Positions 15,920 through 57,991 of a stretch of DNA of 64,000 nt are shown here, in pieces. The translations under genes were made by a program, and so were the position numbers. How positions within the stretch are numbered: position 1 is the stretch's first letter; every line of letters begins with the position of its first letter. The notes beneath the pieces were generated by a model. It made no database searches, was not told the origin of the DNA, and saw only the letters and a program-made list of their open reading frames with translations. The stretch covers positions 186,001 to 250,000 of the IMG/VR virus record IMGVR_UViG_3300042907_001080. One strand, given 5' to 3'.

Positions 15920-15922
15920 TGT

Positions 15923-16129: not shown

Positions 16130-16154
16130 TTTTGTGTCCTATTCATATTTATCG

Positions 16155-28800: not shown

Positions 28801-30292
28801 GTCCTTCACGTATGTCTCGACCTCGGACAGCTTCAACGGTGTTAGTAGTAACATCTCCTGTGAAGTCTGTGCGCAATCCTGCGGTGTAGATCAAGAATCT
28901 AGGAAGATCTACTACGAAATTTGGCAATGAGCTAAATCCCGAACCTTTGTCTGTAATAGTGATACTGGTAATTGCCCCGCCGGTAACCACAGCGGAACCG
29001 AATGCTCCACTACCACCGCCACCGGTAATTCTTACAGAAACTAAACTGTAACCACTTCCACCATTGCTGATAGATACTGACCCCACTTTGTATCTGATAT
29101 TAAAAGTGGCACCAGTTCCTATTGGACCGATCCCTACAGGCGCAGCACTAGTGATGATTGTGGTCGGCACGGCAGTTGCACCCGGTAGCGCAGTATATGT
29201 GCCAGTAGAGACGACTTTAAAAGTAACAATAGCACCGGGAGTAGTTAGGGTAGTCAATACTTCTATTAAACAAGCCCCACCACCCGAAGGCACAGTTCCT
29301 CCAGAGACTTGTAGTATATCACCGGGATAATAATTTGCACCTACAGTATTAATTACAACAGTGTCCACACTCATACGTATGGTGCCAGCAAATCCTATGC
29401 CAGATGTAGGGGATTCTTCAATGGCAGTCAACGAACATTCGGTAGCTCCGTTATTAAAGGTCAGTGTTTTTTCATAAGGCCCAATAATAGCTCGTGATTC
29501 TAAAACCAATTGTTCTGCACGTTTGAGAGCAGCTTCGAGAGTTCTATAAGCATACGCTAGAGCACGACCTTGCAGTTCTTGCGACACACCCGGGCGATCG
29601 TCTTCACCGCTGAGCGCCACATACAAATTCACACTGCTACCAAATGCCGAACTATCAACATACTGTTTTGTAGCTGCGATCAATCCGCCGTAATTTGTGT
29701 CGTCATCTGGTTCTGGACTTCTAGAAAGTATCAGCGGTCCGCTCATACGTCCAAAGCTGGTATCCGTAAGACCTGTAGCAGGATCTATGGCATTGACTCC
29801 GAATCTAGATATTTTAGAATCTGCATAATTCTTATTAACTAATTCGTGACTGTAAATTGGTGCCAACGGGCTAATTGTTGTTCCGGCATCAATTATACGA
29901 TATTGATTACCGCCAGAGCGCATGGACAAATCGCCGCCTAGTTGTGGTGTTGTATCAGCAGCTATTTCGGCAAAATCTGCATTAATTGCAATTTGATTGG
30001 GGTTAGTGGTAAAATCAATGCTGATACCACTGCCTGCAACAAGTTTTTTAAATTGCAGTCCTGACTCTGTGTTATTCACAGTGACTACAGGAGTATTGCC
30101 AGTAACAACATCGTTCTGACCCACGTAGGTAGATGGAGTGTCTTCTAGGCCTGTGAATTGTAATCTTTCGCCGAGCCCTAGTGAGCTGTAAAGTTCTCTA
30201 AAGTTGTCATTAACTTTACGGAATGAATCTCTTATACTGTCGCCGGTGCCGTCGTTGCCAACGGTACCGATATCAATAGTCTTTCTTGCCAT
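22835..30292 (-). CDS. giant virion structural protein (2485 aa) with C-terminal peptidase-G2/IMC autocleavage-like domain
   Basis: N-terminal IDIGTVGNDGTGDSIRDSFRKVNDNF; C-terminal ADLAEYY..GTVLVFGG.KEVT..VAGVVS..VALQGRVPCKV. Confidence 0.82.
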   Translation of the reverse strand: MARKTIDIGTVGNDGTGDSIRDSFRKVNDNFRELYSSLGLGERLQFTGLEDTPSTYVGQNDVVTGNTPVVTVNNTESGLQFKKLVAGSGISIDFTTNPNQIAINADFAEIAADTTPQLGGDLSMRSGGNQYRIIDAGTTISPLAPIYSHELVNKNYADSKISRFGVNAIDPATGLTDTSFGRMSGPLILSRSPEPDDDTNYGGLIAATKQYVDSSAFGSSVNLYVALSGEDDRPGVSQELQGRALAYAYRTLEAALKRAEQLVLESRAIIGPYEKTLTFNNGATECSLTAIEESPTSGIGFAGTIRMSVDTVVINTVGANYYPGDILQVSGGTVPSGGGACLIEVLTTLTTPGAIVTFKVVSTGTYTALPGATAVPTTIITSAAPVGIGPIGTGATFNIRYKVGSVSISNGGSGYSLVSVRITGGGGSGAFGSAVVTGGAITSITITDKGSGFSSLPNFVVDLPRFLIYTAGLRTDFTGDVTTNTVEAVRGRDIREGLFLRGKTSNALAQIVAHSGQLESGGNEIFDVDILSGNFQIGESITYGDIARNIQISVLVESGEYFENYPLKVPANVSVVGDEFRRVIFRPRPGTSASPWAFNKFRRDPVIDGLDVVTQAYGYHYLQNSTQPVYPKIQNKGGYEAAADLIRLNRQFLQEEIVATIEFRKINNVIPFVSTFNYDKPFYKTSIGILVDDLTFDLDYGEYNRTISAALKYYQSEIGNTVITTQLSEYLAVIDLFEELVQDIITNTAVTSPKQNLFLQTIDPAFQSEVGADGVITDLITAFKDVIDGSGSVNYPKDNEEMDVFLANDTVRWQAISAIGHGGFMGVLDPTGQILSRSPYFQECASFSRSKDRQVFAGGMFTDGFAGNLEFNIDVVVTPTRLQVSDLDRFPQLPASFIVADSVYRINYVRDFVYDKDGSTATFVLDETTPWPFSVFTYNSAACSRDTGLILDGLGRDIVLGTNYWTRQNGLTYRLSQSAVVLTDQRRITLEAIEFVHDSVNDLITAYPTIQETVDQSNTVIADTIERGIVAAPALSFTLPVGLSANVTNAYALLLANRDYEIAELIAYIDAQIAGNLSGFTTATVYVASEVEYQIRQAVDAVIHDLIYGGNVATRTRGLKFYNNLTGAVITDSSLTQAQSATWHAYLNYLLGQIVQDLAPAVSYSAVTRTSGTPASATEAATINTLMTRMSSIIGAANFTAAQAVVAITEPSFVGYTANNIAVRTIIQTNKAALQASAVSYVDFNGNRYELLMPGNRSMLCNDFTQINDLGYGIVVANGGLTEAVSMFTYYCHIAYYSLTGGQIRSVGGSNAHGNYALVAEGADPLEVPTPTTVYEDLNQRVDCYFPSGAYANVAGGLSIFVYNYDYTPLSGSELEVLHGTEIYRYPVTSVTTTDLPVGVARLNLSTGIGSASEGLFAVVANNTKMTMRQLSNTLLTGSLEDVAVRPSTGLKLRETLSNVYRVLSFTNTADSNGPYEILVNPATPTIFRVALTITDIVSNVCTTSGNHKLRIGDRIIPTSTANNFVSGITYYIITQPTYNTFTVSTTPGGGTFTLTNGSGLSIKAVKTHKLLEAYTITFTTTGTLPAPLLVGETYYVLPNNLTETQFSISTQKNGAAVSITTAGSGIHRYNIVGLTLTQTRENYNYIDITVFQPGEFISSTPTGTTCTISIANPAVVTLVGHGFSAGDVVKFTTTGALPTGISIQNRYFVVSTGNPDTFQITDVPGDPAIETSGTQSGVHKVGLVTGRAGDNAFAVIAISTTEISRLSAAKFVYLGEEYVISSYQGPGVTGTVFGRITLNRPLVNAINNLSTSYTIKAAVAVRTSGSLGTLTIRIALTRVTGHDLLEIGTGSYADTNYPKEIYGGSVNPIDDSKETEERDVGRVFYVTTDQFGNFSVGPYFRVDQGTGQVTFSSSIALSNLDGIGFKRGVPVSEFSTDSGFTDNATDTVPTENATRKYIDRRLGISHEGAAVAPAEVIPLGTGGFMSLDGQLGMQANMNLNFNKISNVADPTDPQDAVNLQSLTFTNLQNYAGSNVQAGQVMVFTGVGDIFVNASVTGDLTFDLRTGIDSTLNNIDVQLSAGAVNNAEVNAAAAIEQSKLAMTIATAQAAAPTGSAAVIQAASGLSSFSNADFDVTDGHVTIKANSIQLGDLAQLAPDTLIGNSSVSTANAAAVAFADVVNDGLAIKKSQYSALGFLRRTGATATSDGSYSIVAGSSGSSSSVGASEIIVRDVNGDFGGRTVDVSNIKIDTQLAVDSATTATGGYLRYYGYNSAGGILISEGSLAADDKTSYWNDSHEFKTQNGVSNAPITAVGAITSSSTITCTGIQAQTLTTGGNVVAGTIIGNWSLNPGSRMQATYAADLAEYYEGDREYEVGTVLVFGGDKEVTTGNIKGDTRVAGVVSNNAAFVMYDACPGLKNLVALQGRVPCKVVGKISKGDILITSGIPGVAVAATSDVKVGTVVGKALVAYDSDHIGSIEIAVGRT

Positions 30293-30364: not shown

Positions 30365-30652
30365 ATGTTTCTCACAATCAAAACTCAGCAAAATCAATAC
30401 TCTAGACTCAGTAAACACGGAGTCGAACATCAATATAAGAGAAAAAAGACCGTAGCAGTATTGAGATGTGACGCCTGTGATTCAATATTTGAAAGAGATC
30501 TCAAACATATAGATAAGAAACGCCTCAGCAACAATTTCTTTCATTGTTGCGGGTCTTGTGATGCCAAAAGATTTGCTCAACGCAAGGGGATTGAGCAGAA
30601 GCAGATATGGAACATGCCTGCTAGTTTAGACTTACCTGTGTCTAAATTCTAA
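30365..30652 (+). CDS. hypothetical protein with putative Zn-binding cysteines
   Basis: CDAC ... CCGSC. Confidence 0.65.
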   Translation: MFLTIKTQQNQYSRLSKHGVEHQYKRKKTVAVLRCDACDSIFERDLKHIDKKRLSNNFFHCCGSCDAKRFAQRKGIEQKQIWNMPASLDLPVSKF

Positions 30653-30968
30653 ATGATTCGCCGCAGCCGCAGCGATCTCGCTCATTGGGATTGATAAAAT
30701 CAAAGCCTTCATTGAGTCCATTGCGGACCCAATCCATGGTCAACCCGTTTAAATAGGCTAGACTTTTGGCATCAACCAGCACAACAAACCCGTCGTGTGC
30801 AAAATTAGTTACTCCTACTTCAGATTCGTAACTGTCCACGTATTCTAACACATAGGCTAGCCCACTGCACCCTGTGGTTCTAACACCTATGCGAATGCCT
30901 ACACCTTTACCTCGGCGTTCTAAATTCTGTTTAATCTTTTTAGCCGCTGTGTCGGTTACGGTAATCAT
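30642..30968 (-). CDS. iscA: Fe-S cluster assembly A-type carrier IscA
   Basis: GVRTTGCSGLAY, F.NPN..RCGCGESF. Confidence 0.95.
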   Translation of the reverse strand: MITVTDTAAKKIKQNLERRGKGVGIRIGVRTTGCSGLAYVLEYVDSYESEVGVTNFAHDGFVVLVDAKSLAYLNGLTMDWVRNGLNEGFDFINPNERDRCGCGESFRI

Positions 30969-31326
30969 CTACGGCCGCCTTGATAGCATCTTCTGCAAGG
31001 ATACTACAATGTATCTTTACTGGTGGTAGAGCTAGTTCTTCTGCTATTTCTTTGTTTTTGATTGTTCCGGCTTGGTCGAGGGTTTTGCCTTTGAGCCACT
31101 CTGTGACAAGGCTCGAACTCGCGATAGCCGATCCGCAGCCATACGTTTTAAATTTTGCATCTGTAATAATACCTGTATCATGATCTACCTTTATTTGTAG
31201 TTTCATTACGTCACCGCAAGCAGGAGCACCGACCATACCAGTGCCCACTGTGGGATCATCTTTGGCAAATGATCCTACATTACGTGGGTTTTCGTAATGA
31301 TCAATTACTTTGTCCGAGTACGCCAT
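30940..31326 (-). CDS. iscU: Fe-S cluster scaffold IscU
   Basis: MAYSDKVIDHYENPRNVG, GAPACGDVM, YGCGSAIASSS, LPPVKIHCS. Confidence 0.97.
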   Translation of the reverse strand: MAYSDKVIDHYENPRNVGSFAKDDPTVGTGMVGAPACGDVMKLQIKVDHDTGIITDAKFKTYGCGSAIASSSLVTEWLKGKTLDQAGTIKNKEIAEELALPPVKIHCSILAEDAIKAAVDDYRNRHSG

Positions 31327-31858
31327 TGATTATTCTCCAGTTTATTATCTTCCATATATTAGACAAATAGCTTTTTTTATCTGCCTGATAGTCCAATGCC
31401 CATGCATGTTCCCACCAATCTACTAATAGCACAATGTCGTTCTTGATTTCGTGATTCACAATGGTTTTGATCTTGCCATCCCGAGCCAAGTATACCCATC
31501 CGCTGCCCTGTATCTTCATGGCTGTTTTTTCAAATTCTTCTTTGAACCGGTCAAAAGTATCAAAGTGTTTTTCTATAAACTGTAAAATAGCATCATAGGG
31601 TCTATTAGATCCTTCTGGTTTTTGTAGTTGACCAAAATAGATACTGTGTAAAAATGCGCCAGCTTCGTTGAAATCGTCATCACCTTCGCCCTTGTTGTAG
31701 CGATCAACATAGGCTTTGTATAATGTTCCGTAGTGATAATCTATGGTTTCTTTGGATTTCACGGGATCGAGATCTTCGCGATCGTATGGCAGTGTCAACT
31801 GTATGAGTTTGTCTTTTTTGCCTTCAACAATGAACTTTTGAATGAAATTGTATGCCAT
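31301..31858 (-). CDS. Fe/Mn superoxide dismutase (compact, divergent)
   Basis: LPY...L.P, YHYG, FLHSIYF, GSGWVYL, DWWEHAW..DY; start revised to MAYNF. Confidence 0.88.
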   Translation of the reverse strand: MAYNFIQKFIVEGKKDKLIQLTLPYDREDLDPVKSKETIDYHYGTLYKAYVDRYNKGEGDDDFNEAGAFLHSIYFGQLQKPEGSNRPYDAILQFIEKHFDTFDRFKEEFEKTAMKIQGSGWVYLARDGKIKTIVNHEIKNDIVLLVDWWEHAWALDYQADKKSYLSNIWKIINWRIINGVLGQSN

Positions 31859-31863
31859 ACATG

Positions 31864-31880
31864 TATTTACCGCATAAATA
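31864..31880. promoter_or_regulatory. divergent TAAATA late-type promoter pair
   Basis: Minus-strand TAAATA 5 nt before the SOD ATG; plus-strand ATAAATA before the SD and ATG at 31901. Confidence 0.62.
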
Positions 31881-31900
31881 ACCGACAAGGAGATTTTAAT

Positions 31901-32140
31901 ATGCTAGGATTAATCAAGAAACTTTTTGGCAGTAAGCCAGCCGAACCTGTTGCAGTTCCCTACAAGGTAGAAACTCCACCAGTCGAAGTCGCACAACCTT
32001 CAGTCGAGCCAACAGCAGCAGAAGTTTCTGCTGAAAACAAAGCAGTGGCAGTGGCAAAAGCCAAACGAGCACCAGCGAAAAAAGCGCCTATTAAGAAAGT
32101 AGCAGCGCCGAAGACTCCGCGAAAGCCAAAGGCTCCGTAA
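31901..32140 (+). CDS. small protein with Ala/Lys/Pro-rich histone-H1-like tail
   Basis: AAGGAG SD; MLGLIKKLFG amphipathic N-terminus; KRAPAKKAPIKKVAAPKTPRKPKAP. Confidence 0.72.
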   Translation: MLGLIKKLFGSKPAEPVAVPYKVETPPVEVAQPSVEPTAAEVSAENKAVAVAKAKRAPAKKAPIKKVAAPKTPRKPKAP

Positions 32141-33161
32141 CTTTTTTATCCTGCTCGTAAAGGGCAAATGAGGCTAAATTCTTGGCCTTGCTTTCACACA
32201 TGATGTCTGCCCACGGCCTATGTGTCAACGCCCACTCATTGACCGCGGTATTCCAATAAAAGCCACTGTGTGCTCTTAGTTTGGCTTTTTTGTAACCTGC
32301 TTCTAGGAGGGACGGAAGATCGGGGCGGATGTGTCTGGGATGGTCAATAAGACAGTCTTCCCGTGAAACACTATAATGTATGACAGGGCGCACACCACGC
32401 CAGCTATCGATAACCCTTTTAACACGATCATCATTTGCTTCAATGTATTCTCCAGTTTTAATCCAGTGATGATGAATGTCTAGCACCAAGGCACAGTCTT
32501 TGACCAATTCAATGCTAGATTCAATACCCCAGGTCATTTCGTCATTTTCAATGGTAAGGCAGTTGCGAGCCTCGGGTGTCATTTTGCTAAGAGCGTCACG
32601 AATACCTTGTGGTCCCAGCTTGCCGGAGATATGCACATTGATCTTGAAGTCTTGGAATGTTTGACCATATCCCATCCATCGAGCCATGTCCACATGATAC
32701 TCGAACTCTTCTATACTGCGTTCTACTATGCCCGGGTTAATAGACGCCAACACGCAAAACTGGCCAGGATGAAAGCTGAGCCTAACATTATTCTTCCTAG
32801 CCACATCACCCACACGGGCAAATCCTCTTTCTGCAAAGGCTCTAACATCGGGCTGCCGCCAAAACCACTTCCAACTAGGCTCAGTGTATACAGGAAGTAT
32901 ATCACTTGAGAGTCGTACCATTCTAAGATCTTCATCTAATGTTCCTACCCTGCTGACTAATTTATAGCAGGCTTCTATGTTTCGTTCCATTAACTCCCAA
33001 AGACGCTGTTCTGCTTCTTGAGGATGTTCACGCAACCACCTAACTGTGGTAGAGCCTGTATTTAAGTCACGATCAACAGCATTGATTTTCATGCCGTTGA
33101 CTTCGGAAGGATCGTTGATCCATTTGCAGGCAAAGCCTAGACGTCTGAGTGTAGTGTTCAT
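32091..33161 (-). CDS. uvsE: UV-damage endonuclease UvsE/UVDE
   Basis: RLGFACK, RLSSDILP, RLSFHPGQFCVL, INVH, LTIENDE, LVLDIHHH, IMCESKAKN. Confidence 0.93.
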   Translation of the reverse strand: MNTTLRRLGFACKWINDPSEVNGMKINAVDRDLNTGSTTVRWLREHPQEAEQRLWELMERNIEACYKLVSRVGTLDEDLRMVRLSSDILPVYTEPSWKWFWRQPDVRAFAERGFARVGDVARKNNVRLSFHPGQFCVLASINPGIVERSIEEFEYHVDMARWMGYGQTFQDFKINVHISGKLGPQGIRDALSKMTPEARNCLTIENDEMTWGIESSIELVKDCALVLDIHHHWIKTGEYIEANDDRVKRVIDSWRGVRPVIHYSVSREDCLIDHPRHIRPDLPSLLEAGYKKAKLRAHSGFYWNTAVNEWALTHRPWADIMCESKAKNLASFALYEQDKKVTEPLAFAESSALLLS

Positions 33162-33167: not shown

Positions 33168-33196
33168 AGTATAACATCATCACTGCCAGTTGTCAA
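33168..33196 (-). promoter_or_regulatory. sigma70-type promoter, probably giving leaderless uvsE mRNA
   Basis: TTGACA-17nt-TATACT, ending 6 nt before the ATG. Confidence 0.8.
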
Positions 33197-33986
33197 CTAC
33201 AAATTTGTCCTGAACATCCTGTGGATTTGGTTCTCCGTGAAACACAGCTATACTACAATCTGGAGGAGGTCGCACATCGTGTTTCACTGTTTTGAATCGC
33301 CGTCCGCCATGTGCAACAGTGAGTTCATCTCTGCTGCGTATTTCCCATTTGTAACTCATAATCCATTCTTTGGGCCAAAATATCATTCTATCTTTGGCTA
33401 TCTTCCAAATCCAATCTTGATCTCCTTGCAGCCGTTGTGCCTCCGACGGTTTCGATTTGAATTGATCGTATATATGACCTTGTGTGCCGTGTGTCCATGC
33501 CAACACCGAACTGTTGAGATAATTCCAACTGGGGAAAAATTTTCTATTGAAATCATGGATACCTATAAAACTGGTAGGATGATATCCAGTGAGCTTATTC
33601 ATGTTGGCATGTATGACTACATCTAGATCCAGATATAATATTCTTCCCCTGAGAGGTAATGCAGAATCAAACATGTGAACCTTGTGCCACCAACCTCTAG
33701 CATAATTGGCGTTGGGTTGATATATTTTACGAACTCCGGCAATATCATGTTGATCGTCGGTGAGACAGGCAAACTCATAAGGCACTGTGAGATGTCTAGA
33801 CACCATATTACGTAGACGCTCTACATATTCACGACCATATTTGTTACCGAATCTCACACACAGCACAGTGATAGGTTCGTTGAGATCCGAAGGCACTACA
33901 AGATCGGGATATTCTCCACGTGCTGCCATTTTGGCAGCTCGCTTTTCAGCCTTGGCTTGTATGCGTTGTTCTTTTGACAATTCCAT
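33180..33986 (-). CDS. glycosyltransferase (GT-A/GT8-like)
   Basis: GNKYG..YV..L..MV.RHL, WW.K..MF, LYLDLDVVI (DxD), NSSVL.W, GDQDWI, VFHGEPNP. Confidence 0.8.
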   Translation of the reverse strand: MELSKEQRIQAKAEKRAAKMAARGEYPDLVVPSDLNEPITVLCVRFGNKYGREYVERLRNMVSRHLTVPYEFACLTDDQHDIAGVRKIYQPNANYARGWWHKVHMFDSALPLRGRILYLDLDVVIHANMNKLTGYHPTSFIGIHDFNRKFFPSWNYLNSSVLAWTHGTQGHIYDQFKSKPSEAQRLQGDQDWIWKIAKDRMIFWPKEWIMSYKWEIRSRDELTVAHGGRRFKTVKHDVRPPPDCSIAVFHGEPNPQDVQDKFVVDNWQ

Positions 33987-34791
33987 CTATGGCTACCAAG
34001 TCTTTTAAAATATCACCCAGGTCGTCTAGTTTGATCATATTTGGACCATCGCTAGGAGCACTATCAGGATCTTCGTGACATTCCATAAAGACAGCTGCCA
34101 CTGAACCTGTGGCTATAGCAGCTCTCGCCAGGTATGGGACCATGGTCCTATCTCCGCCAGATCTTTCTCCCATTCCTCCAGGCTGTTGAACAGAATGTGT
34201 GGCATCAAAGACCACTGGATAGCCAGTGCTTGCCATAATAGGTAGGCTGCGCATATCAACCACAAGATTATTGTATCCATGAGTGTATCCTCTTTCGCAT
34301 AACATAATGCGTTCGTTTCCAGTTGAAGCAATCTTTGATGCGACGTTTTTCATATCGTGGGGAGCAAGAAATTGTCCCTTCTTGACATTTATAGCACAGC
34401 CTGTAGCACCCGCGGCCAACAATAAGTCAGTTTGTCTACATAAAAATGCTGGAATCTGTAGTATGTCAATGCCAGCATCTGCACATTCCTTTGCCTGCCA
34501 GCTTTCATGAATGTCTGTCAAAACAGGCACTCCGAACGTATGTTTAATCGCATTAAGAACATCAAGTCCTTCTTTGATTCCTACACCACGTTTGGTAGAA
34601 ATACTAGAACGATTGGCTTTGTCAAAACTGCTTTTGTATATCAAAGGAATACCTAATAATGCTGTGATAGCAATTAATCTTGCACAAGTATCTTCTGCAT
34701 GATCTTGACTTTCAATTTGGCAAGGTCCAGCAATTAATACGAACGGAAGATTGTTACTAACAGAGAGAGAATTAATATTAAATGTATGCAT
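33946..34791 (-). CDS. kdsA: 3-deoxy-D-manno-octulosonate 8-phosphate synthase (metal-dependent type)
   Basis: AGPCQIES, KSSFDKANRSS, QIPAFLCRQTDLL, NVKKGQFLAP, FDATHSVQQPG, PSDGP. Confidence 0.96.
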   Translation of the reverse strand: MHTFNINSLSVSNNLPFVLIAGPCQIESQDHAEDTCARLIAITALLGIPLIYKSSFDKANRSSISTKRGVGIKEGLDVLNAIKHTFGVPVLTDIHESWQAKECADAGIDILQIPAFLCRQTDLLLAAGATGCAINVKKGQFLAPHDMKNVASKIASTGNERIMLCERGYTHGYNNLVVDMRSLPIMASTGYPVVFDATHSVQQPGGMGERSGGDRTMVPYLARAAIATGSVAAVFMECHEDPDSAPSDGPNMIKLDDLGDILKDLVAIDGIVKRTTHTSQG

Positions 34792-34799
34792 ATAATTAT

Positions 34800-34991
34800 T
34801 TACCAATGCCTAATGGTGTTGGCAACAATAAAGCAACAGGTTATAACGTGAATGACTACCCAAAAAGTTTTTAAGAATAAAACAATTCGAGCTTCACGTA
34901 GAGTGAGGATAGGCACATCTGGCCTATCCTCATCAGTTTGTCCCATTCTGTGCCCGGTTGCCCGAGCCCATATTTTTTCAAAACTATTCAT
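34800..34991 (-). CDS. small membrane protein
   Basis: 63 aa with hydrophobic C-terminal helix; ATGA-coupled to queD. Confidence 0.68.
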   Translation of the reverse strand: MNSFEKIWARATGHRMGQTDEDRPDVPILTLREARIVLFLKTFWVVIHVITCCFIVANTIRHW

Positions 34992-35515
34992 CCTTCGTAT
35001 ATTGCAGAATTACCTGCGTGTTCGAATACTTCGGCAGATTTTAGTTTAACGCCTACGCCAACAGGATAACGTGCTTCAAAAACACGACCATCAGGATGTG
35101 TCCAGCCACGGCCTTCTTGATAAGCAGTTAGAATTTCGTTCATAGTCTTGTAAACTAGTTCGGCAAACATTTCACAGCCTACACCATCTACAATACGTAG
35201 ATCGATGATGCCCATGTTTTTAAAACCACCTTGGATTTTGTTTAATTCTACAAATGTGCCACGTTCTGGATCGTCTTTGCCAATAACTAGTGTATGATCA
35301 AATTGCCATTCACTCCATTCTTTGAATGCTTTGAGTCCACCAAAGTCCATGACCCAGTTGCGATCATCTAAGGTTTCTGATTCAAAGATTAGTTTAATGC
35401 CAATGGAGTAACCATGTAGCATAGAACAATGTGAGTGCGTTGAACGCCATTGTCTAAAACAGCATGACAGCCCTCTGTCGTTGCCGTAAGTTTTTGTTGA
35501 AAGATATTTTGCCAT
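34988..35515 (-). CDS. queD: 6-carboxytetrahydropterin synthase / PTPS
   Basis: SHCSMLHGY, NWVMDFGGLK, FDH, GCEMFA, VFEH..NSA.Y. Confidence 0.88.
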   Translation of the reverse strand: MAKYLSTKTYGNDRGLSCCFRQWRSTHSHCSMLHGYSIGIKLIFESETLDDRNWVMDFGGLKAFKEWSEWQFDHTLVIGKDDPERGTFVELNKIQGGFKNMGIIDLRIVDGVGCEMFAELVYKTMNEILTAYQEGRGWTHPDGRVFEARYPVGVGVKLKSAEVFEHAGNSAIYEG

Positions 35516-35538
35516 CTCTAGTCTCCTTTATATAGGTA

Positions 35539-35592
35539 GCAAGTTTGATGACTGCAGAGTGTTTATAGAGGGATGATGCCATAGAGTCCTCT
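35539..35592 (-). promoter_or_regulatory. preQ1-I-like riboswitch aptamer variant in the queD 5' UTR
   Basis: Minus strand AGAGG-ACTCTATGGCATCATC-CCTCT-ATAAA-CACTCTGCAGTCATCAAACTTGC upstream of an AAGGAG SD; P1 stem and ATAAA match the Bacillus queC preQ1-I pattern. Confidence 0.68.
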
Positions 35593-35626
35593 TTGTGTGT
35601 ATTGTAATATTATATTACATTTCTAT

Positions 35627-36220
35627 TTATAATGCAATGAATTTCACATTATTTTTCTGCCATTCCGGTGGCATCTGCCAGTCTGGTCTATTATAGATCA
35701 CAAATGTTGTATCGGGATAATACATGAATACTGCGGCAATTTGATAGACCCAATAGCTGGGATCTACTGCCTGTGATCCCACTCTAGCATAGTTCACGGT
35801 GCCTTTGTAGATATTATTCACACTGTGATCGATCGGATACAGATCAAATCCGATCATTACAACTTCTTCGTGTCCTAACATCGCTGACAATAGCACAGCA
35901 TAACCGCCACTGCCCCAATGTTCAGCTTGATCCTTTTTCGATTCACCTCGGGTAGGCACCTCAGGTAGAAGATTGATGTTTTTGTTTTTTCTTATTTTTC
36001 TGAAGTAGTGATGCCAATGGTCCCGCACATAGATTTCTGTGTCTTTGGTATTGGGATTATTTACAGCTTCGTCAGCCATTCTGCGATCGCAACAGACCAA
36101 ATGATTGACATTTAGATCTCGATGTATGGCATTACATCCTATAAGAACATGATCGGTGTATGCGCTGATATCAACGCGGCGTCTACTTTCGCCATTGCCA
36201 ATTACCAATGCTCGAGGCAT
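35627..36220 (-). CDS. GT42/MAF(DUF115)-like putative CMP-ulosonate glycosyltransferase
   Basis: LVIGNGESR, IGCNA, SGGYAVLLSAMLGHEEVVMIGFDLY resembles the CstII/MAF fold pattern. Confidence 0.55.
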   Translation of the reverse strand: MPRALVIGNGESRRRVDISAYTDHVLIGCNAIHRDLNVNHLVCCDRRMADEAVNNPNTKDTEIYVRDHWHHYFRKIRKNKNINLLPEVPTRGESKKDQAEHWGSGGYAVLLSAMLGHEEVVMIGFDLYPIDHSVNNIYKGTVNYARVGSQAVDPSYWVYQIAAVFMYYPDTTFVIYNRPDWQMPPEWQKNNVKFIAL

Positions 36221-37062
36221 TATTCGATTCTACCGAATCCGTTCCATATTCCAGGGTTGCCTGGCTGAACACATACCCAACCAATTGACTTTCCTGCTTG
36301 AGGTGAACTGTTCCATACGATATCGCCTTCGTTAAACGAACCGCTACTAGGAGGTTCATTCCCACTAAGATGCAACTTGTCGTTGAATTTTAATGCACCA
36401 TTTACGTGTAATGTACTACGAGGATCAGGATTGTTGACATTGATGCCCAGGGAACCTATGATTGTGACCTTGGTATCGCCCACCGTCGGATTGCCTATGA
36501 TAACATTACCGCCAGCTTTGATTTGGATCCTAGCTGTGTTATCGGTTCCTAGTTCTAGGTCAGTGTAATTATAAGTGCCAATTCTTGCAGTGTTGGTACC
36601 TTCTGCACCTATTACTATATCCACATTTTGATCTATGATATTAACAGCAGCTTTGGGTTGATCTGTTCCAAGCCCTAATCGATCAGATATACTGTCATAA
36701 ACTAGATATTGATTTACACTTAATCCGCCATCTACTATCAATCCCTTGAGACGACCAACTTCTCTTAAACTGCTTTTGGTTACGGTAGGACCTAATTCTT
36801 TCTCATCAATTAATTTGATGTTGTTGGTGCTTAGATATTTTCCTTTGGCAAGATCTATATTTTCAGATATAAAAAATCTATCTGGATCGGAATTAAAAAT
36901 GAACTGTTTATTATGTCCCTGTCCATTCCACAGTATGCCTTTGCCATTGATATCGCCTTTGATGATGATGTAAGGGAATTCAGCAGAGTCAATTTCTTGA
37001 CCTTCTTGAAATACTTCTTGCAATAGGGTAGTTAGGGCATTTAATTTTTCTTGGCTTGCCAT
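36220..37062 (-). CDS. putative virion protein (paralog of 37064-38158)
   Basis: Shared GKG.LW.GQG..KQFIFNS.PDRFF, KELGPT.TKS.LREVGRL, EGDI.WN..P....GWVC; start revised to MASQEK. Confidence 0.68.
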   Translation of the reverse strand: MASQEKLNALTTLLQEVFQEGQEIDSAEFPYIIIKGDINGKGILWNGQGHNKQFIFNSDPDRFFISENIDLAKGKYLSTNNIKLIDEKELGPTVTKSSLREVGRLKGLIVDGGLSVNQYLVYDSISDRLGLGTDQPKAAVNIIDQNVDIVIGAEGTNTARIGTYNYTDLELGTDNTARIQIKAGGNVIIGNPTVGDTKVTIIGSLGINVNNPDPRSTLHVNGALKFNDKLHLSGNEPPSSGSFNEGDIVWNSSPQAGKSIGWVCVQPGNPGIWNGFGRIE

Positions 37063-37063
37063 G

Positions 37064-38158
37064 TTATGAATTTCCAATTTTACCGAAAGGCGACCATATC
37101 CCAGGAGATCCGGTTTGAATGCACACCCAACCCACATAAGAGTTCATTCTCGGTTGGATGTTCCATATAATGTCACCTTCGTTATACGATCCATTTGTTG
37201 GATAAGTGCTGTCGTATTTTTGCAGTCTATTGTTGAATCTCACTGCGCCATTTACATGCAGATCAACTTCTGGATCCGGAGTCGAAACCCTTACTGAAAG
37301 TTTACCATGTACATGTATTTGGGTAGGAGCCAGTTTGGGATTACCTAATATAATATTGCCACTCGACGAGATGATTATTCTTGCAGTGTTGTCAGTGCCT
37401 AATTCTAAATTATTACTGGCGTAAGTGCCAATGAATGCTTTTACGGTGTCTTTGGTGCCGAGAACTATCTCTACTCCGTCATCTAGGATGCTGACAGCTG
37501 CGTTAGGATTTTCAGTGCCTAGTCCTAGTCTGCTAGTGTTGGCATCGAATACCATAAACTGACCCACCGATAATCCGCCATCTACTATCAGTCCATTAAG
37601 CCGACCAACTTCTCTGAGATTGCTTTTGGTTATAGTAGGACCTAATTCTTTCTCATCAATTACTTTGATGTTGTTGACAGTGATGCTTTTGCCTTTGGCA
37701 AGATCGATGGATTCAGATGAAAAGAATCTATCCGGACTGGAGTTAAATATAAACTGTTTGGTATATCCTTGGCCACTCCAAAGCAGTCCTTTGCCGTCGA
37801 TGGTATCACCTGAAAACACAATAGGCACATCTTTCTCAAATTTGATATCTGCACGTATCTCATCCACCTCTAGAATCTTGGTTTTTAGGGTGCCTGCGAC
37901 TGTGAGATTATCGATGTTTTCTACGAACAGATTAGTGACAGTGACACCATCATTGTTCACTGTTAATTGAGTTTTTACAGCGGTATCTGTGATACCGGTG
38001 CTGGCAAAGTTATGTATTTTGCCTCCGGAAATATGATCCCCCGATAGAGATCGAAATGGCATTTTTCTTGCGATTTCTTTGACATCTGGGGCAGCGGTTT
38101 GTGCGATCGAGTTGATCTCATCGCCTAGTGCGGCTAATAAATTATTGACATTACTCAT
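37064..38158 (-). CDS. putative virion protein (paralog of 36220-37062)
   Basis: Same shared motifs; TAAATA 7 nt upstream; start revised to MSNVNN. Confidence 0.68.
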   Translation of the reverse strand: MSNVNNLLAALGDEINSIAQTAAPDVKEIARKMPFRSLSGDHISGGKIHNFASTGITDTAVKTQLTVNNDGVTVTNLFVENIDNLTVAGTLKTKILEVDEIRADIKFEKDVPIVFSGDTIDGKGLLWSGQGYTKQFIFNSSPDRFFSSESIDLAKGKSITVNNIKVIDEKELGPTITKSNLREVGRLNGLIVDGGLSVGQFMVFDANTSRLGLGTENPNAAVSILDDGVEIVLGTKDTVKAFIGTYASNNLELGTDNTARIIISSSGNIILGNPKLAPTQIHVHGKLSVRVSTPDPEVDLHVNGAVRFNNRLQKYDSTYPTNGSYNEGDIIWNIQPRMNSYVGWVCIQTGSPGIWSPFGKIGNS

Positions 38159-38180
38159 AGTAATGTATTTATCCGCCAAC

Positions 38181-38207
38181 AAAAAAGCGGACCAAAGCCC
38201 GCTTTTT
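38181..38207 (-). terminator. rho-independent terminator (likely bidirectional)
   Basis: Minus strand AAAAA-GCGGGC-TTTG-GTCCGC-TTTTTT. Confidence 0.85.
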
Positions 38208-38224: not shown

Positions 38225-39400
38225 TTATTGCACTTTAAGTAGCACAGTATCTTCGTTGATACGACCGTTGAGTTTGATATCTACGGCCTTGATATCGTCT
38301 AGAAACTTGCGTAACTGCACTTTACCTGCAGCCTTGAACTCTTTGAGCTGTTCTTCGGGCTTGCGCAGAGTTTTCTGCACACTTTTTATTGGATCAAATC
38401 CAATAACTGTGGTGCCTTTGACTGCAAGATCGCTGAATTCAGCAGCCATATATTTGCCCAATTTGCGTGTTTTGACATTAAAGATCCACAGTTCCTTGGC
38501 TCCGATGATGTCTTGTGGGTTGATAGACACTAATTTAAGTTTTTCATCCTGCTTGAGATACTTCATCTTGGCCACAACTTTGGCCTTGTCAGTGGGCTTT
38601 TTAGCACGAGGCTTTTTATTAACCTTAGCCTCTTGTGCTAGCATATCACAGGCTGCAAGAATTTCGCTATAGAACAGCGTGATCTTCTTTAGATTGGCCT
38701 TGCTCAAATGACTATAACCTTCTTTCAATTGCTCGTCTTTGGTAGTGGCTGCTTCCACTAATTCGTCATAGTTTCGACTGTATAGTGTTTTAATGATTCG
38801 AGCGTGAGCGGCCTTGGCTTGGCGTCCACGTAGAAGATTTAGAAGTTTAAATGCTTTTGGATCAAATGCATCTGGATCTGTTTGAAAAGCTTCAATAGCA
38901 TCTTCAATCTCTTCAGTCATGCCTATTGCAACTTCACGCAGTCGTTCTTGGATGCTAGGAGTACACACTGCGGGTTTGACCTCCACTGCACCTTCTTCGA
39001 GTTCAACTTCGTCATGTTTACCTTCTTCGATGATCTTAGCAATGGCTTTGCTTAACCATTCTGCGGTATTACGGCCCTCGTTGAAGTCTGCTCTTACTGC
39101 TGGCATACCTTTGAGTAAGTTGGCAGCAATGGCACCTACGGTCGTGCCGCATCGATTGTCTTTGGTATCTTTGAATGCTTTAATAACATCTTTTGGATAG
39201 TTCTGGCTGCTCATCCAATTAATAACTTTGGGTTTGAGTTCTTTGCCGCTGGTTTCCAAACGATAATAACTCATAGCCATCCGGAAATGTCGACTGAACT
39301 GGTCAGCAGTCATGATCTCGTGGTCGTCCCATTTTGGACTTAGATCACGTCCTTTGTTTTGGCGGATATCGATACTTGCTTTTTTCAGTTTGGTTACCAT
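38225..39400 (-). CDS. conserved hypothetical early protein
   Basis: Start revised to MVTKLKK with AGGAG SD; LVSINP..IIGA.ELW.FNVKTRKL, KTLRKP C-terminus. Confidence 0.75.
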   Translation of the reverse strand: MVTKLKKASIDIRQNKGRDLSPKWDDHEIMTADQFSRHFRMAMSYYRLETSGKELKPKVINWMSSQNYPKDVIKAFKDTKDNRCGTTVGAIAANLLKGMPAVRADFNEGRNTAEWLSKAIAKIIEEGKHDEVELEEGAVEVKPAVCTPSIQERLREVAIGMTEEIEDAIEAFQTDPDAFDPKAFKLLNLLRGRQAKAAHARIIKTLYSRNYDELVEAATTKDEQLKEGYSHLSKANLKKITLFYSEILAACDMLAQEAKVNKKPRAKKPTDKAKVVAKMKYLKQDEKLKLVSINPQDIIGAKELWIFNVKTRKLGKYMAAEFSDLAVKGTTVIGFDPIKSVQKTLRKPEEQLKEFKAAGKVQLRKFLDDIKAVDIKLNGRINEDTVLLKVQ

Positions 39401-39431
39401 AGAGTCACTCCTGTTGTTAAACAATACATAT

Positions 39432-39460
39432 ATTATAGCACCAAATGATGAACATGTCAA
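39432..39460 (-). promoter_or_regulatory. consensus sigma70 promoter
   Basis: TTGACA-17nt-TATAAT. Confidence 0.88.
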
Positions 39461-44175: not shown

Positions 44176-45156
44176 ATGACACAAGACTTCACAAAGATAC
44201 CATTCCATAACATAACAAGATTTGGTCAACGCACCATGTTGCATCGCCCGTTATTTTCTACCAGTTGGATTTTGGGCCGTTTCTGTAATTATAACTGTTC
44301 TTACTGTTGGCCCTATGCTAGATCGGACAAGGTAGATCACCAGCCTTTAGAAGTATATACTAATACTGTAGATGAAATCAAACGACAGGCTCGACTAAAT
44401 GGCTTCAATGAATTCCATTGGAGTTTCAGTGGCGGTGAACCTACTGCTTACCGACAGCTACATGATTTGATTAAACACCTTGACGAAACAGAAAGCACAT
44501 ACCAAAGTATACACATGACAACCAATTTAAGTCCTGGAAGTAAATGGTGGAATACCTGGTGTGCCAACACAGCATTACTACAACGCAGAAGTATCACAGC
44601 ATCATTTCATGATGAGTTTGCTCGAGAGCAGGAATTCGGTGACAAGTGTCTACAGTTATTGCATGAGCGTGTGCATGTCACAGTCAATCAAGTAATGGTC
44701 CCGGAAAAGTTTTATGAGCTTTATGAACGCATGTCTCGGCTACATGCTCGTGGAATCAATGTTACGCTCAAACCGCAAAGTGATCCTACAGCGAGTCGTG
44801 TAGTCGATGGCTACACAACAGAAATGATTGATCTATTACAGACTGGATTTCCTCAAACATCACAAGGCGAAGACGTTTATCAAATAGCATTGTATGATAC
44901 AGACAACAAAGAATATTTGTTCGATCAAGCAGAAAGATTTAATGCTTTTGGTTTTAACAAATTCCAAGGTTGGAGTTGCAATAGTGGGTATCAAAGTGTT
45001 ATAATAAGAGGTAATGAAGTGAAACGATCATATAGCTGTCACGACCGACTATTAGGAACACTAGAGAGCTTTGAGCTTTTTAAAAAACCAACAGTTTGTA
45101 TAACACCTAGTTGTGTCAGCAGTGCTGATTCAAAGATACCAAAATGTATAAACTAG
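44176..45156 (+). CDS. radical SAM protein with C-terminal Cys-rich (twitch-like) domain
   Basis: CNYNCSYC, SGGEPT, TTN, C..G..SC...C...C. Confidence 0.92.
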   Translation: MTQDFTKIPFHNITRFGQRTMLHRPLFSTSWILGRFCNYNCSYCWPYARSDKVDHQPLEVYTNTVDEIKRQARLNGFNEFHWSFSGGEPTAYRQLHDLIKHLDETESTYQSIHMTTNLSPGSKWWNTWCANTALLQRRSITASFHDEFAREQEFGDKCLQLLHERVHVTVNQVMVPEKFYELYERMSRLHARGINVTLKPQSDPTASRVVDGYTTEMIDLLQTGFPQTSQGEDVYQIALYDTDNKEYLFDQAERFNAFGFNKFQGWSCNSGYQSVIIRGNEVKRSYSCHDRLLGTLESFELFKKPTVCITPSCVSSADSKIPKCIN

Positions 45157-50820: not shown

Positions 50821-50824
50821 TGAT

Positions 50825-51025
50825 ATGATCAATGAAAAATACAGTAATGAAGATGTTCCTATTCAAGATACATTTTATATGCAAAAGTTTATGGAGATTC
50901 AACGTCAAAATGTTGTATTATCAAATAAACTACGAGACTTATATGAAATTCTTGAGATCCGTGATGTTGTAGAAATGCATTTTGGGGATAAGTTTTTTAA
51001 TATCTTAAATGATACACCTGCATGA
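50825..51025 (+). CDS. hypothetical protein
   Basis: 66-aa ORF ATGA-coupled to a radical SAM gene. Confidence 0.6.
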   Translation: MINEKYSNEDVPIQDTFYMQKFMEIQRQNVVLSNKLRDLYEILEIRDVVEMHFGDKFFNILNDTPA

Positions 51026-57986: not shown

Positions 57987-57991
57987 GGATA

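What the first reader, a model, noticed from the sequence alone, without database searches (positions are those of the whole stretch)
33180..36220. Candidate phage Kdo-glycosylation module: kdsA flanked by GT8-like and GT42/MAF-like transferases
Seen: a complete metal-type KdsA overlaps a DxD glycosyltransferase, and the 197-aa gene at 35627 has the IGNG.S / GCN / SG.YA...A..LG..E....G.D.Y pattern. Established: that pattern marks CstII (GT42) and MAF/DUF115 proteins, which use CMP-ulosonic acids, and KdsA makes Kdo-8P. kdsA has a late-type TAAATA 5 nt upstream. Inference: the phage may decorate its virion, or remodel host LPS, with Kdo-containing glycans, together with the cytidylyltransferase (2268) and epimerase (47432). 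No kdsB/C/D is in this window.
Basis: partly seen in the sequence, partly recalled or inferred. Interest (0 to 1): 0.68.

Follow-up and report, generated by a model that had tools for sequence, protein, structure and literature searches.

The report
Phage sialyltransferase-like gene near optional kdsA
The three enzyme genes are real, but they are not a fixed Kdo-sugar module: kdsA is an optional add-on, and the 197-aa protein belongs to a large virus-only family with a sialyltransferase-like fold that T4-like aquatic phages keep inside their head and fibre gene blocks.

Summary
The window lies in a 281.7-kb T4-like jumbo phage contig. The sequence facts hold. 33946-34791(-) is a complete Cys-type (metal-type) KdsA, and it overlaps a GT-A/GT8-fold DxD glycosyltransferase at 33180-33986(-). 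The 197-aa protein at 35627-36220(-) carries the GNGxS / CN / SG...G.D.Y pattern.

Its family profile hits CstII/CstI at E about 1e-8. Its AF2 model (pLDDT 97) matches Maf (Z 13.2), CstI (Z 10.7) and archaeal MptE-type HPPK (Z 10.7).

The "Kdo module" reading is weak:
- kdsA lies between the two transferases in only 37 of 78 related loci.
- No kdsB, kdsC, kdsD or waaA is found in this contig, nor kdsB, kdsC or waaA in a 98%-complete 353-kb relative.
- The enzyme at 2268 is a TagD/RfaE-type nucleotidyltransferase, not KdsB-type.
- GT8-fold enzymes use UDP-hexoses.
- The neighbouring genes (UvdE, SOD, IscU, IscA) are unrelated accessory genes.

New here: the 197-aa protein belongs to a virus-only family of 648 clusters at 50% identity. 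A second copy in this genome sits between the portal and the prohead protease. 73 of 127 distant loci show the same head-module position.

The pterin-kinase rival is weak, because the neighbouring PTPS-like gene has CxxxHGY rather than ExxHGH and the adjacency is confined to this lineage. The most likely role is a nucleotide-sugar transferase acting on virion proteins. The donor sugar is unknown.

The parts
39432..39460 (-). Perfect sigma-70-type promoter match (TTGACA-17-TATAAT with TG) ahead of the 411-aa gene. It may start a unit running p411 > fibre-like > fibre-like > 197-aa gene.
   Evidence: 12 of 12 matches. The number of such sites in the region is not above shuffles, so it is only a candidate.
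38225..39460 (-). 411-aa conserved protein (phrog_11903, function unknown). The true start is probably downstream of the listed TTG. It is the first gene of the conserved block.
   Evidence: Homologues occur in PA5oct-like and other jumbo phages. It is syntenic in the related loci.
37064..38182 (-). 372-aa fibre-like virion protein, a paralogue of the next gene.
   Evidence: PHROG hits to virion structural, tail-fibre and head-decoration families over the middle and C-terminal parts.
36220..37137 (-). 305-aa fibre-like virion protein. Its TAA stop overlaps the ATG of the 197-aa gene (TAATG).
   Evidence: A fibre-like gene lies immediately upstream of the family gene in 59 of 73 related loci with enough flank.
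35627..36220 (-). 197-aa protein of a virus-specific family with the GT42/DUF115 (sialyltransferase-like, GT-A variant 2) fold. Motifs: GNGESR, GCNA, D45, WGSG, GFDLY, NNIYKGT.NY.
35624..35631 (-). TATAAATA (T4 late-promoter consensus) overlapping the stop codon of the 197-aa gene, 108 nt upstream of the PTPS-like ATG. It may start a unit running PTPS-like > 63 aa > kdsA > GT.
   Evidence: There are only 12 copies in the genome (32 expected), and 7 lie within 60 nt upstream of same-strand ORFs. Suggestive only.
34988..35515 (-). 175-aa PTPS/QueD-like T-fold protein with invariant C30-x3-H34-G-Y36, D73-H74, E115 and E165.
   Evidence: PF01242 49 bits, phrog_2389 E 2.5e-32. Below the QueD cut-off (36 bits against 89). 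Motif analysis.
34800..34991 (-). 63-aa hydrophobic small protein (phrog_1679); present in only some of the relatives.
33946..34791 (-). kdsA: Kdo-8-phosphate synthase, Cys (metal) type. An accessory gene of this phage lineage.
33180..33986 (-). 268-aa GT-A / GT8-fold DxD glycosyltransferase of the P1 PmgQ / P7 HdmD family (phrog_1962), with a charged N-terminal helix.
33168..33196 (-). Sigma-70-like promoter match (11 of 12, with TG) just ahead of the UvdE gene. It marks the downstream edge of the block.

Best explanation
This region is not one dedicated pathway. It is an accessory-gene island between a fibre-like gene block and the baseplate genes of a T4-like jumbo phage, and it holds three separate things.

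(1) The 197-aa protein belongs to a large virus-only family with the sialyltransferase-like fold shared by GT42 CstII/CstI, Maf/DUF115 and WaaZ. It keeps the nucleotide-binding motifs of that fold. It is translationally coupled to a fibre-like virion gene, and its paralogue sits between portal and prohead protease. It is therefore most likely an enzyme that transfers a nucleotide-activated sugar onto a virion protein during assembly. By analogy the donor would be a CMP-linked ulosonic or nonulosonic acid taken from the host pool.

(2) The 268-aa protein is a metal-dependent GT8-fold transferase, which most likely uses a UDP-hexose.

(3) kdsA is an optional auxiliary gene of cellular origin. 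Its nearest cellular relatives are Alphaproteobacteria. It raises Kdo-8-P synthesis in the infected cell, and the host must supply KdsD, KdsC and KdsB.

Shown: the gene identities, the folds, the conserved motifs, the synteny statistics and the absence of the other Kdo genes. Inferred: that the 197-aa protein is catalytically active, that its acceptor is a virion protein, and the nature of its donor.
For: - Family size and virus restriction: 1177 hits in the 90%-identity collection, 648 clusters at 50% identity, no Pfam annotation, and Atlas clusters that are 94-100% viral.
- Sequence link to GT42: E 7e-9 to 2e-7, covering both the N-terminal GNGxS..CN stretch and the SG..A..G.D.Y stretch.
- Relatives reach PF01973 (8 of 109; P0159 scores 49.9 bits, above the gathering cut-off) and PF06002 (7 of 109).
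- Fold: AF2 pLDDT 97.4. Maf 5mu5 Z 13.2 over 165 residues, CstI Z 10.7 over 171 residues, and GT29 sialyltransferases Z 8-9.
- Structural-module synteny: a fibre-like gene is immediately upstream in 59 of 73 loci. The second paralogue (G000:C1:92017-92673) lies in the order Portal_T4 > paralogue > acidic 291-aa protein > Peptidase_S77 > scaffold > Gp23. The family gene lies just after portal/g81 in 73 of 127 distant loci and within 3 kb after gp23 in 13 more.
- GT268 has the GT8 fold with DxD plus His.
- KdsA scores above the equivalog cut-offs. It lies between the two transferases in 37 of 78 loci, in two sequence types (76-92% and 45-55% identity) that do not track the identity of the 197-aa gene.
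- No PF02348, SIS, KdsC or WaaA in this genome. None of PF02348, KdsC or WaaA in the 98%-complete 353-kb relative either.
- Neighbouring UvdE, SOD, IscU and IscA show that the island is functionally mixed.
Against: - No biochemical data exist for any member of the family.
- The protein itself hits no Pfam, NCBIfam or PDB sequence on its own.
- The CstII catalytic His188 has no invariant counterpart. There is no His among the invariant or near-invariant columns.
- The fold is shared with pyrophosphokinases: MjHPPK Z 10.7 at rmsd 2.6, plus thiamin pyrophosphokinases and SteA. Fold alone therefore does not prove a glycosyltransferase.
- Position within structural operons is only circumstantial evidence about the acceptor.
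- A perfect sigma-70-type promoter ahead of the p411-fibre-197aa unit would fit early rather than late expression.
- The complex prediction with the upstream fibre-like protein gave no answer.
Confidence: 0.5

Rival explanations
1. One reading: a dedicated Kdo-glycosylation module. The phage KdsA raises Kdo supply, host KdsC and KdsB make CMP-Kdo, and the 197-aa enzyme transfers Kdo onto virion proteins or host LPS, with the GT8-like enzyme adding further sugars.
For: - kdsA lies in the same minus-strand block, always in the same slot between the PTPS-like/63-aa genes and the GT8-like gene.
- CMP-Kdo is, from general knowledge, a CMP-ulosonic acid that nearly all Gram-negative hosts make.
- The fold superfamily does include a named Kdo transferase. 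E. coli WaaZ hits PF01973 at E 6.9e-7, and its homologues carry PF01973 plus PF27901 WaaZ_KDO_III.
- An Atlas feature search lists a bacterial MptE-like/WaaZ cluster at score 0.89, which is a lead only.
- GT73 CMP-Kdo transferases are described as GT-A fold (PMC5811610).
Against: - kdsA is absent from 41 of 78 related loci that keep both transferases.
- It is absent around nearly all head-module copies of the family.
- No kdsB, kdsC, kdsD or waaA in this contig. No kdsB, kdsC or waaA in a 98%-complete relative.
- The profile-profile match to WaaZ is not significant (E 0.018, probability 2.5%), whereas the match to CstII is.
- A TATAAATA and a 111-nt spacer separate the 197-aa gene from the kdsA unit.
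- The GT8 fold implies UDP-hexose donors.
Confidence: 0.2
2. The 197-aa protein is an MptE-type 6-hydroxymethyl-dihydropterin pyrophosphokinase. It would work with the adjacent PTPS-like enzyme and the phage FolE in a pterin or folate branch.
For: - The MjHPPK structure 8sd5 matches at Z 10.7, rmsd 2.6 A, over 134 residues.
- Some relatives hit PF01973 'MptE-like'.
- The PTPS-like gene lies directly downstream in 73 of 78 loci of this lineage.
- The genome encodes GTP cyclohydrolase I and ThyX.
Against: - The family profile finds CstII/CstI in the PDB sequences but not 8sd5, even at E up to 10.
- The PTPS-like protein has CxxxHGY. Position 31 is H, S or N and never Glu, so it lacks the ExxHGH signature of the PTPS-III type that makes the HPPK substrate (motifs from PMC5041015).
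- Adjacency to PTPS is confined to one lineage: only 21 of 127 loci found with distant queries, all of the same jumbo-phage type.
- Elsewhere the family sits in the head-gene module, which makes no sense for folate synthesis.
- No FolP in this genome or in the 98%-complete relative.
Confidence: 0.1
3. The family has lost catalysis. It would be a structural or assembly factor, such as a prohead core protein or fibre chaperone, that merely keeps a Rossmann-like fold.
For: - In T4, the interval between portal and protease holds small prohead core proteins gp67 and gp68 (from memory).
- Fibre genes are often followed by chaperone genes.
- The family gene overlaps the stop of a fibre-like gene.
- The CstII catalytic His is not conserved.
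Against: - The residues that stay invariant or nearly so across 109 sequences down to 27% identity are those lining the nucleotide site in CstII: G8-N9-G10, S12, C29-N30, S104-G105, G124, D126. In addition D45, N135, N136, Y138 and Y144 are conserved. That pattern is typical of an active enzyme.
- There is no N-terminal propeptide. The first strand starts at residue 3.
- Complex prediction with the fibre-like neighbour gave no answer, which is neither for nor against.
Confidence: 0.1

Closest known systems
Campylobacter CstII / CstI sialyltransferases (CAZy GT42; PDB 1ro7, 2p2v/2p56)
   Same: The order and wording of the N-terminal GNGxS and CN motifs and of the SG..A...G.D.Y motif are the same. 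Profile E is 7e-9 to 2e-7. Fold match is Z 10.7 over 171 residues.
   Different: The phage protein is about 60-90 residues shorter and has E11 where CstII has P11. It has no invariant His to match catalytic His188, and H/N/Q where CstII has R129. It carries a family-specific NN.YKGT.NY...P..W loop, which lies in the region that HMMER aligns to the stretch after the DFY motif of CstII. PF06002 does not score on the protein itself.
Maf flagellin glycosyltransferase (DUF115/PF01973; PDB 5mu5)
   Same: It is the best structural match (Z 13.2, 165 residues). By analogy it is a soluble enzyme that decorates a structural protein of a large assembly with a CMP-nonulosonic acid.
   Different: Maf is a 632-residue multidomain protein and matches only through its central domain. 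There is no sequence-level hit. PF01973 is reached only through relatives such as P0159.
Archaeal MptE-type HPPK (PDB 8sd5)
   Same: It has the same fold core (Z 10.7, rmsd 2.6 A, 134 residues). A pterin-pathway-like gene lies next door in this lineage.
   Different: There is no sequence hit. The neighbour is not of the PTPS-III type. The family sits in the head module in other phages. No FolP was found.
E. coli WaaZ, KdoIII transferase (PF27901 / PF01973; GT73 by my recollection of CAZy)
   Same: It belongs to the same superfamily (WaaZ hits PF01973 at E 6.9e-7). hhalign places the motifs in the same order: SGPTS ~ GNGES, VNGS ~ CNA, TD ~ CD45, GLDL ~ GFDL. This shows that Kdo transfer is possible on this fold.
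   Different: The profile-profile match is not significant (E 0.018, probability 2.5%). WaaZ is about 283 aa and is confined to Enterobacterales in the search.
kdsA/kdsB auxiliary genes of Synechococcus phage S-SCSM2R (PMC12801897)
   Same: A phage-borne KdsA (40% identity), interpreted there as a cell-wall synthesis and modification gene.
   Different: That phage carries kdsB next to kdsA. This lineage has kdsA alone.
P1 PmgQ / P7 HdmD family (phrog_1962) and GT8 enzymes (LgtC, glycogenin, GlyE)
   Same: The 268-aa protein is 27-33% identical to PmgQ/HdmD and to a Pelagibacter phage Mosig protein. It has the GT8 fold with DxD plus a C-terminal His.
   Different: The Pfam GT8 score is below the gathering cut-off. 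The donor and acceptor of the PmgQ family are not established.

Membership tests
KdsA (Kdo-8-phosphate synthase) | Score above the curated equivalog cut-offs | tested here: met
   NF003543 406 bits (cut-off 242); TIGR01362 379 bits (cut-off 314); the DAHP synthase models score far below their cut-offs.
KdsA, metal-dependent class | Cys in the GPC.IES motif (Asn in class I), plus His, Glu and Asp ligands | tested here: met
   GPCQIES, DATHSVQ and MECHEDP are read directly from the translation. The class rule is from memory of the KDO8PS literature.
Complete Kdo activation/transfer pathway | KdsD (SIS), KdsC, KdsB (PF02348) and a Kdo transferase (WaaA, PF04413) present alongside KdsA | tested here: not met
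   No match in the 281.7-kb contig for any of the four. In the 98%-complete 353-kb relative, PF02348, KdsC and WaaA were searched and not found; SIS was not searched there. The contig is estimated 80% complete.
GT8 (268-aa protein) | GT-A fold closest to GT8 structures, with DxD and a C-terminal His as metal ligands | tested here: met
   LgtC Z 17.6, GlyE 17.5, glycogenin 16.7. D120, D122 and H250 are invariant in 16 homologues.
GT8 (268-aa protein) | Pfam PF01501 above the gathering score | tested here: not met
   14.5 bits against 24.3.
GT42 (CstII/CstI) | CMP-site motifs: GNGxS, CN, SG, D.Y | tested here: met
   Aligned by HMMER to CstII residues 8-12, 30-31, 132-133 and 154-156. E 7e-9. 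The columns are conserved in 109 sequences.
GT42 (CstII/CstI) | Catalytic base His188 (and Arg129) | tested here: not met
   No His among the invariant or 90%-conserved columns. The residue aligned with R129 by hand, from the SG-motif alignment, is H, N or Q. No residue-level structural superposition was available.
GT42 (CstII/CstI) | Use of a CMP-activated ulosonic acid donor | not testable with these tools
PF01973 (DUF115 / MptE-like, including Maf) | HMM score above the gathering cut-off | tested here: inconclusive
   The protein itself gives no hit. 8 of 109 relatives hit (best E 1.7e-8). P0159 (32% identical) scores 49.9 bits against 34.6. Best fold match is Maf, Z 13.2.
MptE-type HPPK | Functional coupling to a supplier of 6-hydroxymethyl-dihydropterin (PTPS-III, ExxHGH) and to FolP | tested here: not met
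   The neighbour has CxxxHGY and never Glu at position 31. There is no FolP. The PTPS adjacency is confined to one lineage.
GT73 / WaaZ KdoIII transferase | Significant profile-profile similarity to the WaaZ family | tested here: not met
   hhalign of A1 against A4: E 0.018, probability 2.5%. PF27901 is not in the local Pfam copy.
T4-type late transcription unit | TATAAATA placed to drive the gene | tested here: inconclusive
   There is one TATAAATA at 35624-35631(-), 108 nt before the PTPS-like ATG, and none before kdsA. Only 12 occur in the genome.

The most novel reading that the evidence does not exclude
T4-like phages of aquatic bacteria (pelagimyophage-like and jumbo relatives) carry, as a near-core gene of the head-morphogenesis module, a virus-specific sialyltransferase-fold enzyme. 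On this reading it glycosylates capsid, prohead or fibre proteins with a CMP-activated acidic sugar. In the jumbo lineage a second copy serves fibre-like proteins, and an acquired kdsA feeds it Kdo. Routine virion glycosylation with ulosonic acids would then be a widespread, unrecognised trait of abundant marine and freshwater phages.
Probability: 0.2. Interest if true: 0.75.

Novelty: new variant of a known kind. Interest (0 to 1): 0.5.

Why it matters
Phage-borne kdsA is already reported, and a GT8-like phage transferase is ordinary. What is new is the 197-aa family. It has hundreds of sequence clusters, is confined to viruses, has no annotation, and gives a very confident sialyltransferase-like model. 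It also holds a fixed place beside the portal, protease and capsid genes of T4-like aquatic phages.

If it is an active transferase, post-translational glycosylation of virions would be common in some of the most abundant phages on Earth. That would bear on particle surface charge, stickiness, host recognition and grazing or decay in the water column. It would also add a virus-specific branch to the GT42 / DUF115 / GT73 superfamily.

Because a cultured carrier exists (Pelagibacter phage HTVC008M, three copies), the question can be tested directly.

Tried and rejected
- Near-identity DNA search of the region against the phage collection: no match.
- The single 197-aa protein against PDB sequences, Pfam and NCBIfam: nothing. 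Only the family profile reached known proteins.
- Foldseek against the PDB gave only borderline E-values (1.4e-3 and weaker), though the right families ranked on top. The VIA-align wide search was clearer.
- The search for related loci with the 109-sequence alignment failed because no stretch was conserved enough. A 27-sequence alignment worked.
- Several encoding-contig look-ups gave contigs too short to inform, no DNA, or no record.
- Literature searches for the MptE/HPPK structure and for DUF115 in phages found nothing useful.
- PF27901 (WaaZ_KDO_III) is not in the local Pfam copy. I substituted a WaaZ family alignment and hhalign. The result was not significant.
- Complex prediction of the 305-aa fibre-like protein with the 197-aa protein: no answer, score 0.00. 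This is not evidence either way.
- The 291-aa protein next to the head-module paralogue is not related to the fibre-like proteins, so the idea of a conserved enzyme-plus-fibre gene pair in both contexts was dropped.
- The idea that the 2268 nucleotidyltransferase stands in for KdsB was rejected. It is a PF01467 HIGH-type enzyme acting on phosphorylated substrates, and it lies among replication genes.
- A complete preQ0/DpdA DNA-modification pathway, as an explanation for the PTPS-like gene, was not supported. FolE is present but no TGT/DpdA was found.
- No reads tools were used. No other genetic code was needed.

Full report
**Setting.** The window is bases 186001-250000 of a 281,658-bp IMG/VR viral contig, estimated 80% complete. 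The phage is T4-like. Elsewhere in the contig the genes run Portal_T4 (366 bits), a family paralogue, an acidic 291-aa protein, the Peptidase_S77 prohead protease, a scaffold-like protein and Gp23 (333 bits).

In the window, all genes of interest are on the minus strand. In order of transcription they are:
- a 411-aa conserved protein (38225-39460)
- two paralogous fibre-like virion proteins (37064-38182 and 36220-37137)
- the 197-aa gene (35627-36220)
- a PTPS/QueD-like gene (34988-35515)
- a 63-aa hydrophobic ORF (34800-34991)
- kdsA (33946-34791)
- a 268-aa glycosyltransferase (33180-33986)
- UvdE, an Fe/Mn SOD-like protein, IscU and IscA
- after one small plus-strand ORF, a 2485-aa gp10-like baseplate protein

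**The observation.**
- KdsA passes two equivalog models well above their cut-offs. It has the Cys-containing GPCQIES motif of the metal-dependent class.
- The kdsA stop overlaps the start of the 268-aa gene by 41 nt.
- The 268-aa protein is weak on Pfam GT8 (14.5 bits) but belongs to phrog_1962, the P1 PmgQ / P7 HdmD family. In 16 homologues D120-x-D122 and H250 are invariant. Its AF2 model (pLDDT 88) is closest to the GT8 enzymes LgtC (Z 17.6), GlyE (17.5) and glycogenin (16.7).
- The 197-aa protein hits nothing on its own. It has 1177 relatives in the 90%-identity collection and 648 clusters at 50% identity.
- A profile of 109 of these relatives hits CstII, CstI and a Pasteurella sialyltransferase at E 7e-9 to 2e-7, through both the GNGxS..CN motif and the SG..A..G.D.Y motif.
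- Eight relatives reach PF01973 (one above the gathering cut-off) and seven reach PF06002.
- The AF2 model is excellent (pLDDT 97.4, pTM 0.93). It matches Maf (Z 13.2), CstI (Z 10.7), the archaeal MptE-type HPPK (Z 10.7), SteA, mammalian GT29 sialyltransferases (Z 8-9) and thiamin pyrophosphokinases (Z 6-8).

The one weak item is the promoter. The TAAATA before kdsA overlaps the stop codon of the previous ORF, and the hexamer is rarer in the genome than composition predicts.

**Is it a Kdo module?** I fetched 80 IMG/VR loci whose 197-aa homologue is 43-100% identical and mapped the neighbours.
- The order p411 > fibre-like > 197-aa > PTPS-like > (63 aa) > GT8-like > UvdE > SOD > IscU > IscA is kept throughout.
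- Of the 78 loci that contain both transferases, 73 have the PTPS-like gene between them, but only 37 have kdsA.
- kdsA always occupies the same slot. It comes in two sequence types (76-92% and 45-55% identical to the window's copy), and these types do not follow the divergence of the 197-aa gene. That is the behaviour of an exchangeable accessory cassette.
- The nearest cellular KdsA proteins are about 60% identical and mostly from Pelagibacteraceae and other Alphaproteobacteria. The phage copies form their own clades.
- The rest of the Kdo pathway is missing. There is no PF02348 (KdsB/NeuA type), SIS domain, KdsC or WaaA in this contig. There is no PF02348 in 12 related contigs, and no PF02348, KdsC or WaaA in the 353-kb contig rated 98% complete, which does carry kdsA.
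- The 'cytidylyltransferase' at 2268 is a PF01467 HIGH-type nucleotidyltransferase. Its best matches, RfaE domain II and TagD, are both below cut-off. It lies next to a MazG-like gene and a clamp-loader gene. Enzymes of that class act on phosphorylated substrates, not on free Kdo.
- The epimerase at 47432 is a generic SDR 4,6-dehydratase/epimerase inside a radical-SAM cluster on the other strand.
- Phage kdsA as an auxiliary gene has been reported before, there together with kdsB (PMC12801897).

**What the 197-aa family is tied to.** Queries with distant family members brought in 127 further loci.
- Only 21 of these show the PTPS-like/GT8-like context, and all 21 belong to the same jumbo lineage.
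- In 73, the family gene (often a tandem pair) lies directly after the T4-type portal gene and an 81-aa ORF, and before a roughly 300-aa protein, the gp21 protease, the scaffold and gp23.
- In 13 more, it lies within 3 kb downstream of gp23.
- The window's own genome has such a head-module copy, 26% identical to the 197-aa protein.
- Pelagibacter phage HTVC008M has three copies. Two flank a carbamoyltransferase/PhyH cluster and one lies shortly after the capsid genes.
- In the jumbo lineage the copy under study overlaps the stop codon of a fibre-like gene (TAATG). A fibre-like gene lies immediately upstream in 59 of 73 loci.

The family is therefore tied to virion-structural gene blocks in two independent contexts. 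It is not tied to kdsA or, in general, to PTPS.

**Transferase or pyrophosphokinase?** The fold is shared by CMP-sugar transferases (GT42, GT29, Maf, WaaZ) and by pyrophosphokinases (MptE, TPK, SteA), so the fold alone cannot decide. Four points favour the transferase side.
- At the sequence level the family profile finds GT42 enzymes but not MjHPPK, even at E up to 10.
- The conserved residues map, by the HMMER alignment, to the CMP-site motifs of CstII.
- The neighbouring PTPS-like protein has an invariant C-x3-H-G-Y and never the Glu of the ExxHGH signature that marks PTPS-III, the type that would make the HPPK substrate.
- No FolP is present, and a folate enzyme has no reason to sit between the portal and the prohead protease.

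Against a simple GT42 assignment, the catalytic His188 of CstII has no invariant counterpart, and the family has its own conserved acidic and aromatic residues (D45, E51, N135, N136, Y138, Y144, W157).

A lead from the Atlas feature search was a bacterial cluster carrying PF01973 and PF27901 WaaZ_KDO_III, at score 0.89. I followed it up.
- E. coli WaaZ, named 3-deoxy-D-manno-oct-2-ulosonate III transferase, does hit PF01973 (E 6.9e-7).
- Its homologues carry both families. Kdo transfer therefore has a precedent in this superfamily.
- However, the profile-profile comparison of the phage family with a WaaZ alignment is not significant (E 0.018, probability 2.5%).

Kdo remains one possible donor among several.

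**Transcription.** A perfect sigma-70-type promoter match lies ahead of the 411-aa gene (39460-39432). An 11-of-12 match lies ahead of UvdE. A TATAAATA overlaps the stop of the 197-aa gene, followed by an AT-only 17-nt palindrome and a 111-nt spacer before the PTPS-like gene. This suggests, but does not show, that the 197-aa gene and kdsA belong to different units.

**Conclusion.** The enzyme identifications are right. The proposal of a dedicated Kdo-glycosylation module is only weakly supported.

The best reading is a mixed accessory island with three parts:
- an optional kdsA auxiliary gene
- a GT8-fold hexosyltransferase of the PmgQ family
- a member of a large, unannotated, virus-specific family with the sialyltransferase fold, whose fixed place in head and fibre gene blocks points to modification of virion proteins

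The donor sugar, the acceptor and even the catalytic activity remain inferences.

Noticed in passing
window 44176-62942 (both strands): A dense cluster of at least nine radical-SAM genes, several with SPASM domains. Two score far above the cut-off for the twitch-domain radical SAM family NF033640 (51022-52422, 407 bits; 55443-56720, 314 bits). The cluster also holds a 2OG-Fe(II) oxygenase (48342-48974), an SDR dehydratase/epimerase (47432-48358) and a PP-loop ATPase with a weak QueC/TilS match (57273-58109). G+C is lower here (0.33-0.38) than in the structural block (0.41-0.47). This is very unusual for a phage.
   Followed up: partly
window 30642-33161 (-): A run of auxiliary genes directly downstream of the finding: UvdE UV endonuclease, an Fe/Mn SOD-like protein, IscU (NifU_N) and IscA. 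The Fe-S assembly genes may serve the many radical-SAM enzymes. The run is conserved in order across the related loci.
   Followed up: partly
G000:C1:92017-92673 (-), outside the window (locus L302:10017-10673): A second paralogue of the 197-aa family (218 aa, 26% identity) lies between Portal_T4 and an acidic 291-aa protein, ahead of the gp21 protease, scaffold and Gp23. The same arrangement is seen in 73 of 127 distant loci.
   Followed up: yes
G000:C1:162258-162785 (-), outside the window (locus L090): A GTP cyclohydrolase I (FolE) gene at 134 bits. Together with the PTPS-like gene and a weak QueC-like gene it hints at a deazaguanine or pterin branch, but no TGT/DpdA was found in the contig.
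   Followed up: partly
window 34988-35515 (-): The PTPS-like protein has an invariant CxxxHGY in 64 homologues instead of HGH. Phe, Tyr or (rarely) His sits where, by a hand alignment to E. coli QueD from memory, the first Zn-ligand His of QueD would lie. It fits none of the published PTPS-I, -II or -III signatures.
   Followed up: partly
window 46701-47435 (+): A single ORF fuses a cold-shock DNA-binding domain (residues 5-65) to a glutathione peroxidase domain (residues 74-172).
   Followed up: no
window 39432-39460 (-) and 35603-35619: A 12-of-12 sigma-70 promoter match with an extended -10 TG lies ahead of the 411-aa gene. A perfect AT-only 17-nt palindrome (TGTAATAT-A-ATATTACA) lies in the spacer after the 197-aa gene, next to a TATAAATA.
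   Followed up: no
loci L018, L023, L034-L037, L044, L078, L082 against the rest: Phage kdsA occurs as two divergent types at the same genomic slot. The type does not track the divergence of the flanking genes; for example, L024 has a 197-aa homologue at 60% identity but KdsA at 91%. This suggests cassette exchange between phages.
   Followed up: partly
window 22835-30292 (-) and 5250-21032 (-): A series of very large structural ORFs (2485, 1625, 1393, 975 and 833 aa). For the homologues of the 2485-aa one in related loci, a weak T4 gp9/gp10 N-terminal match is on record.
   Followed up: no
protein P0159 (435 aa; metagenome contigs without DNA): A relative made of two tandem copies of the family domain. 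Its first copy scores above the PF01973 gathering cut-off. It is the sequence bridge between the phage family and DUF115.
   Followed up: partly
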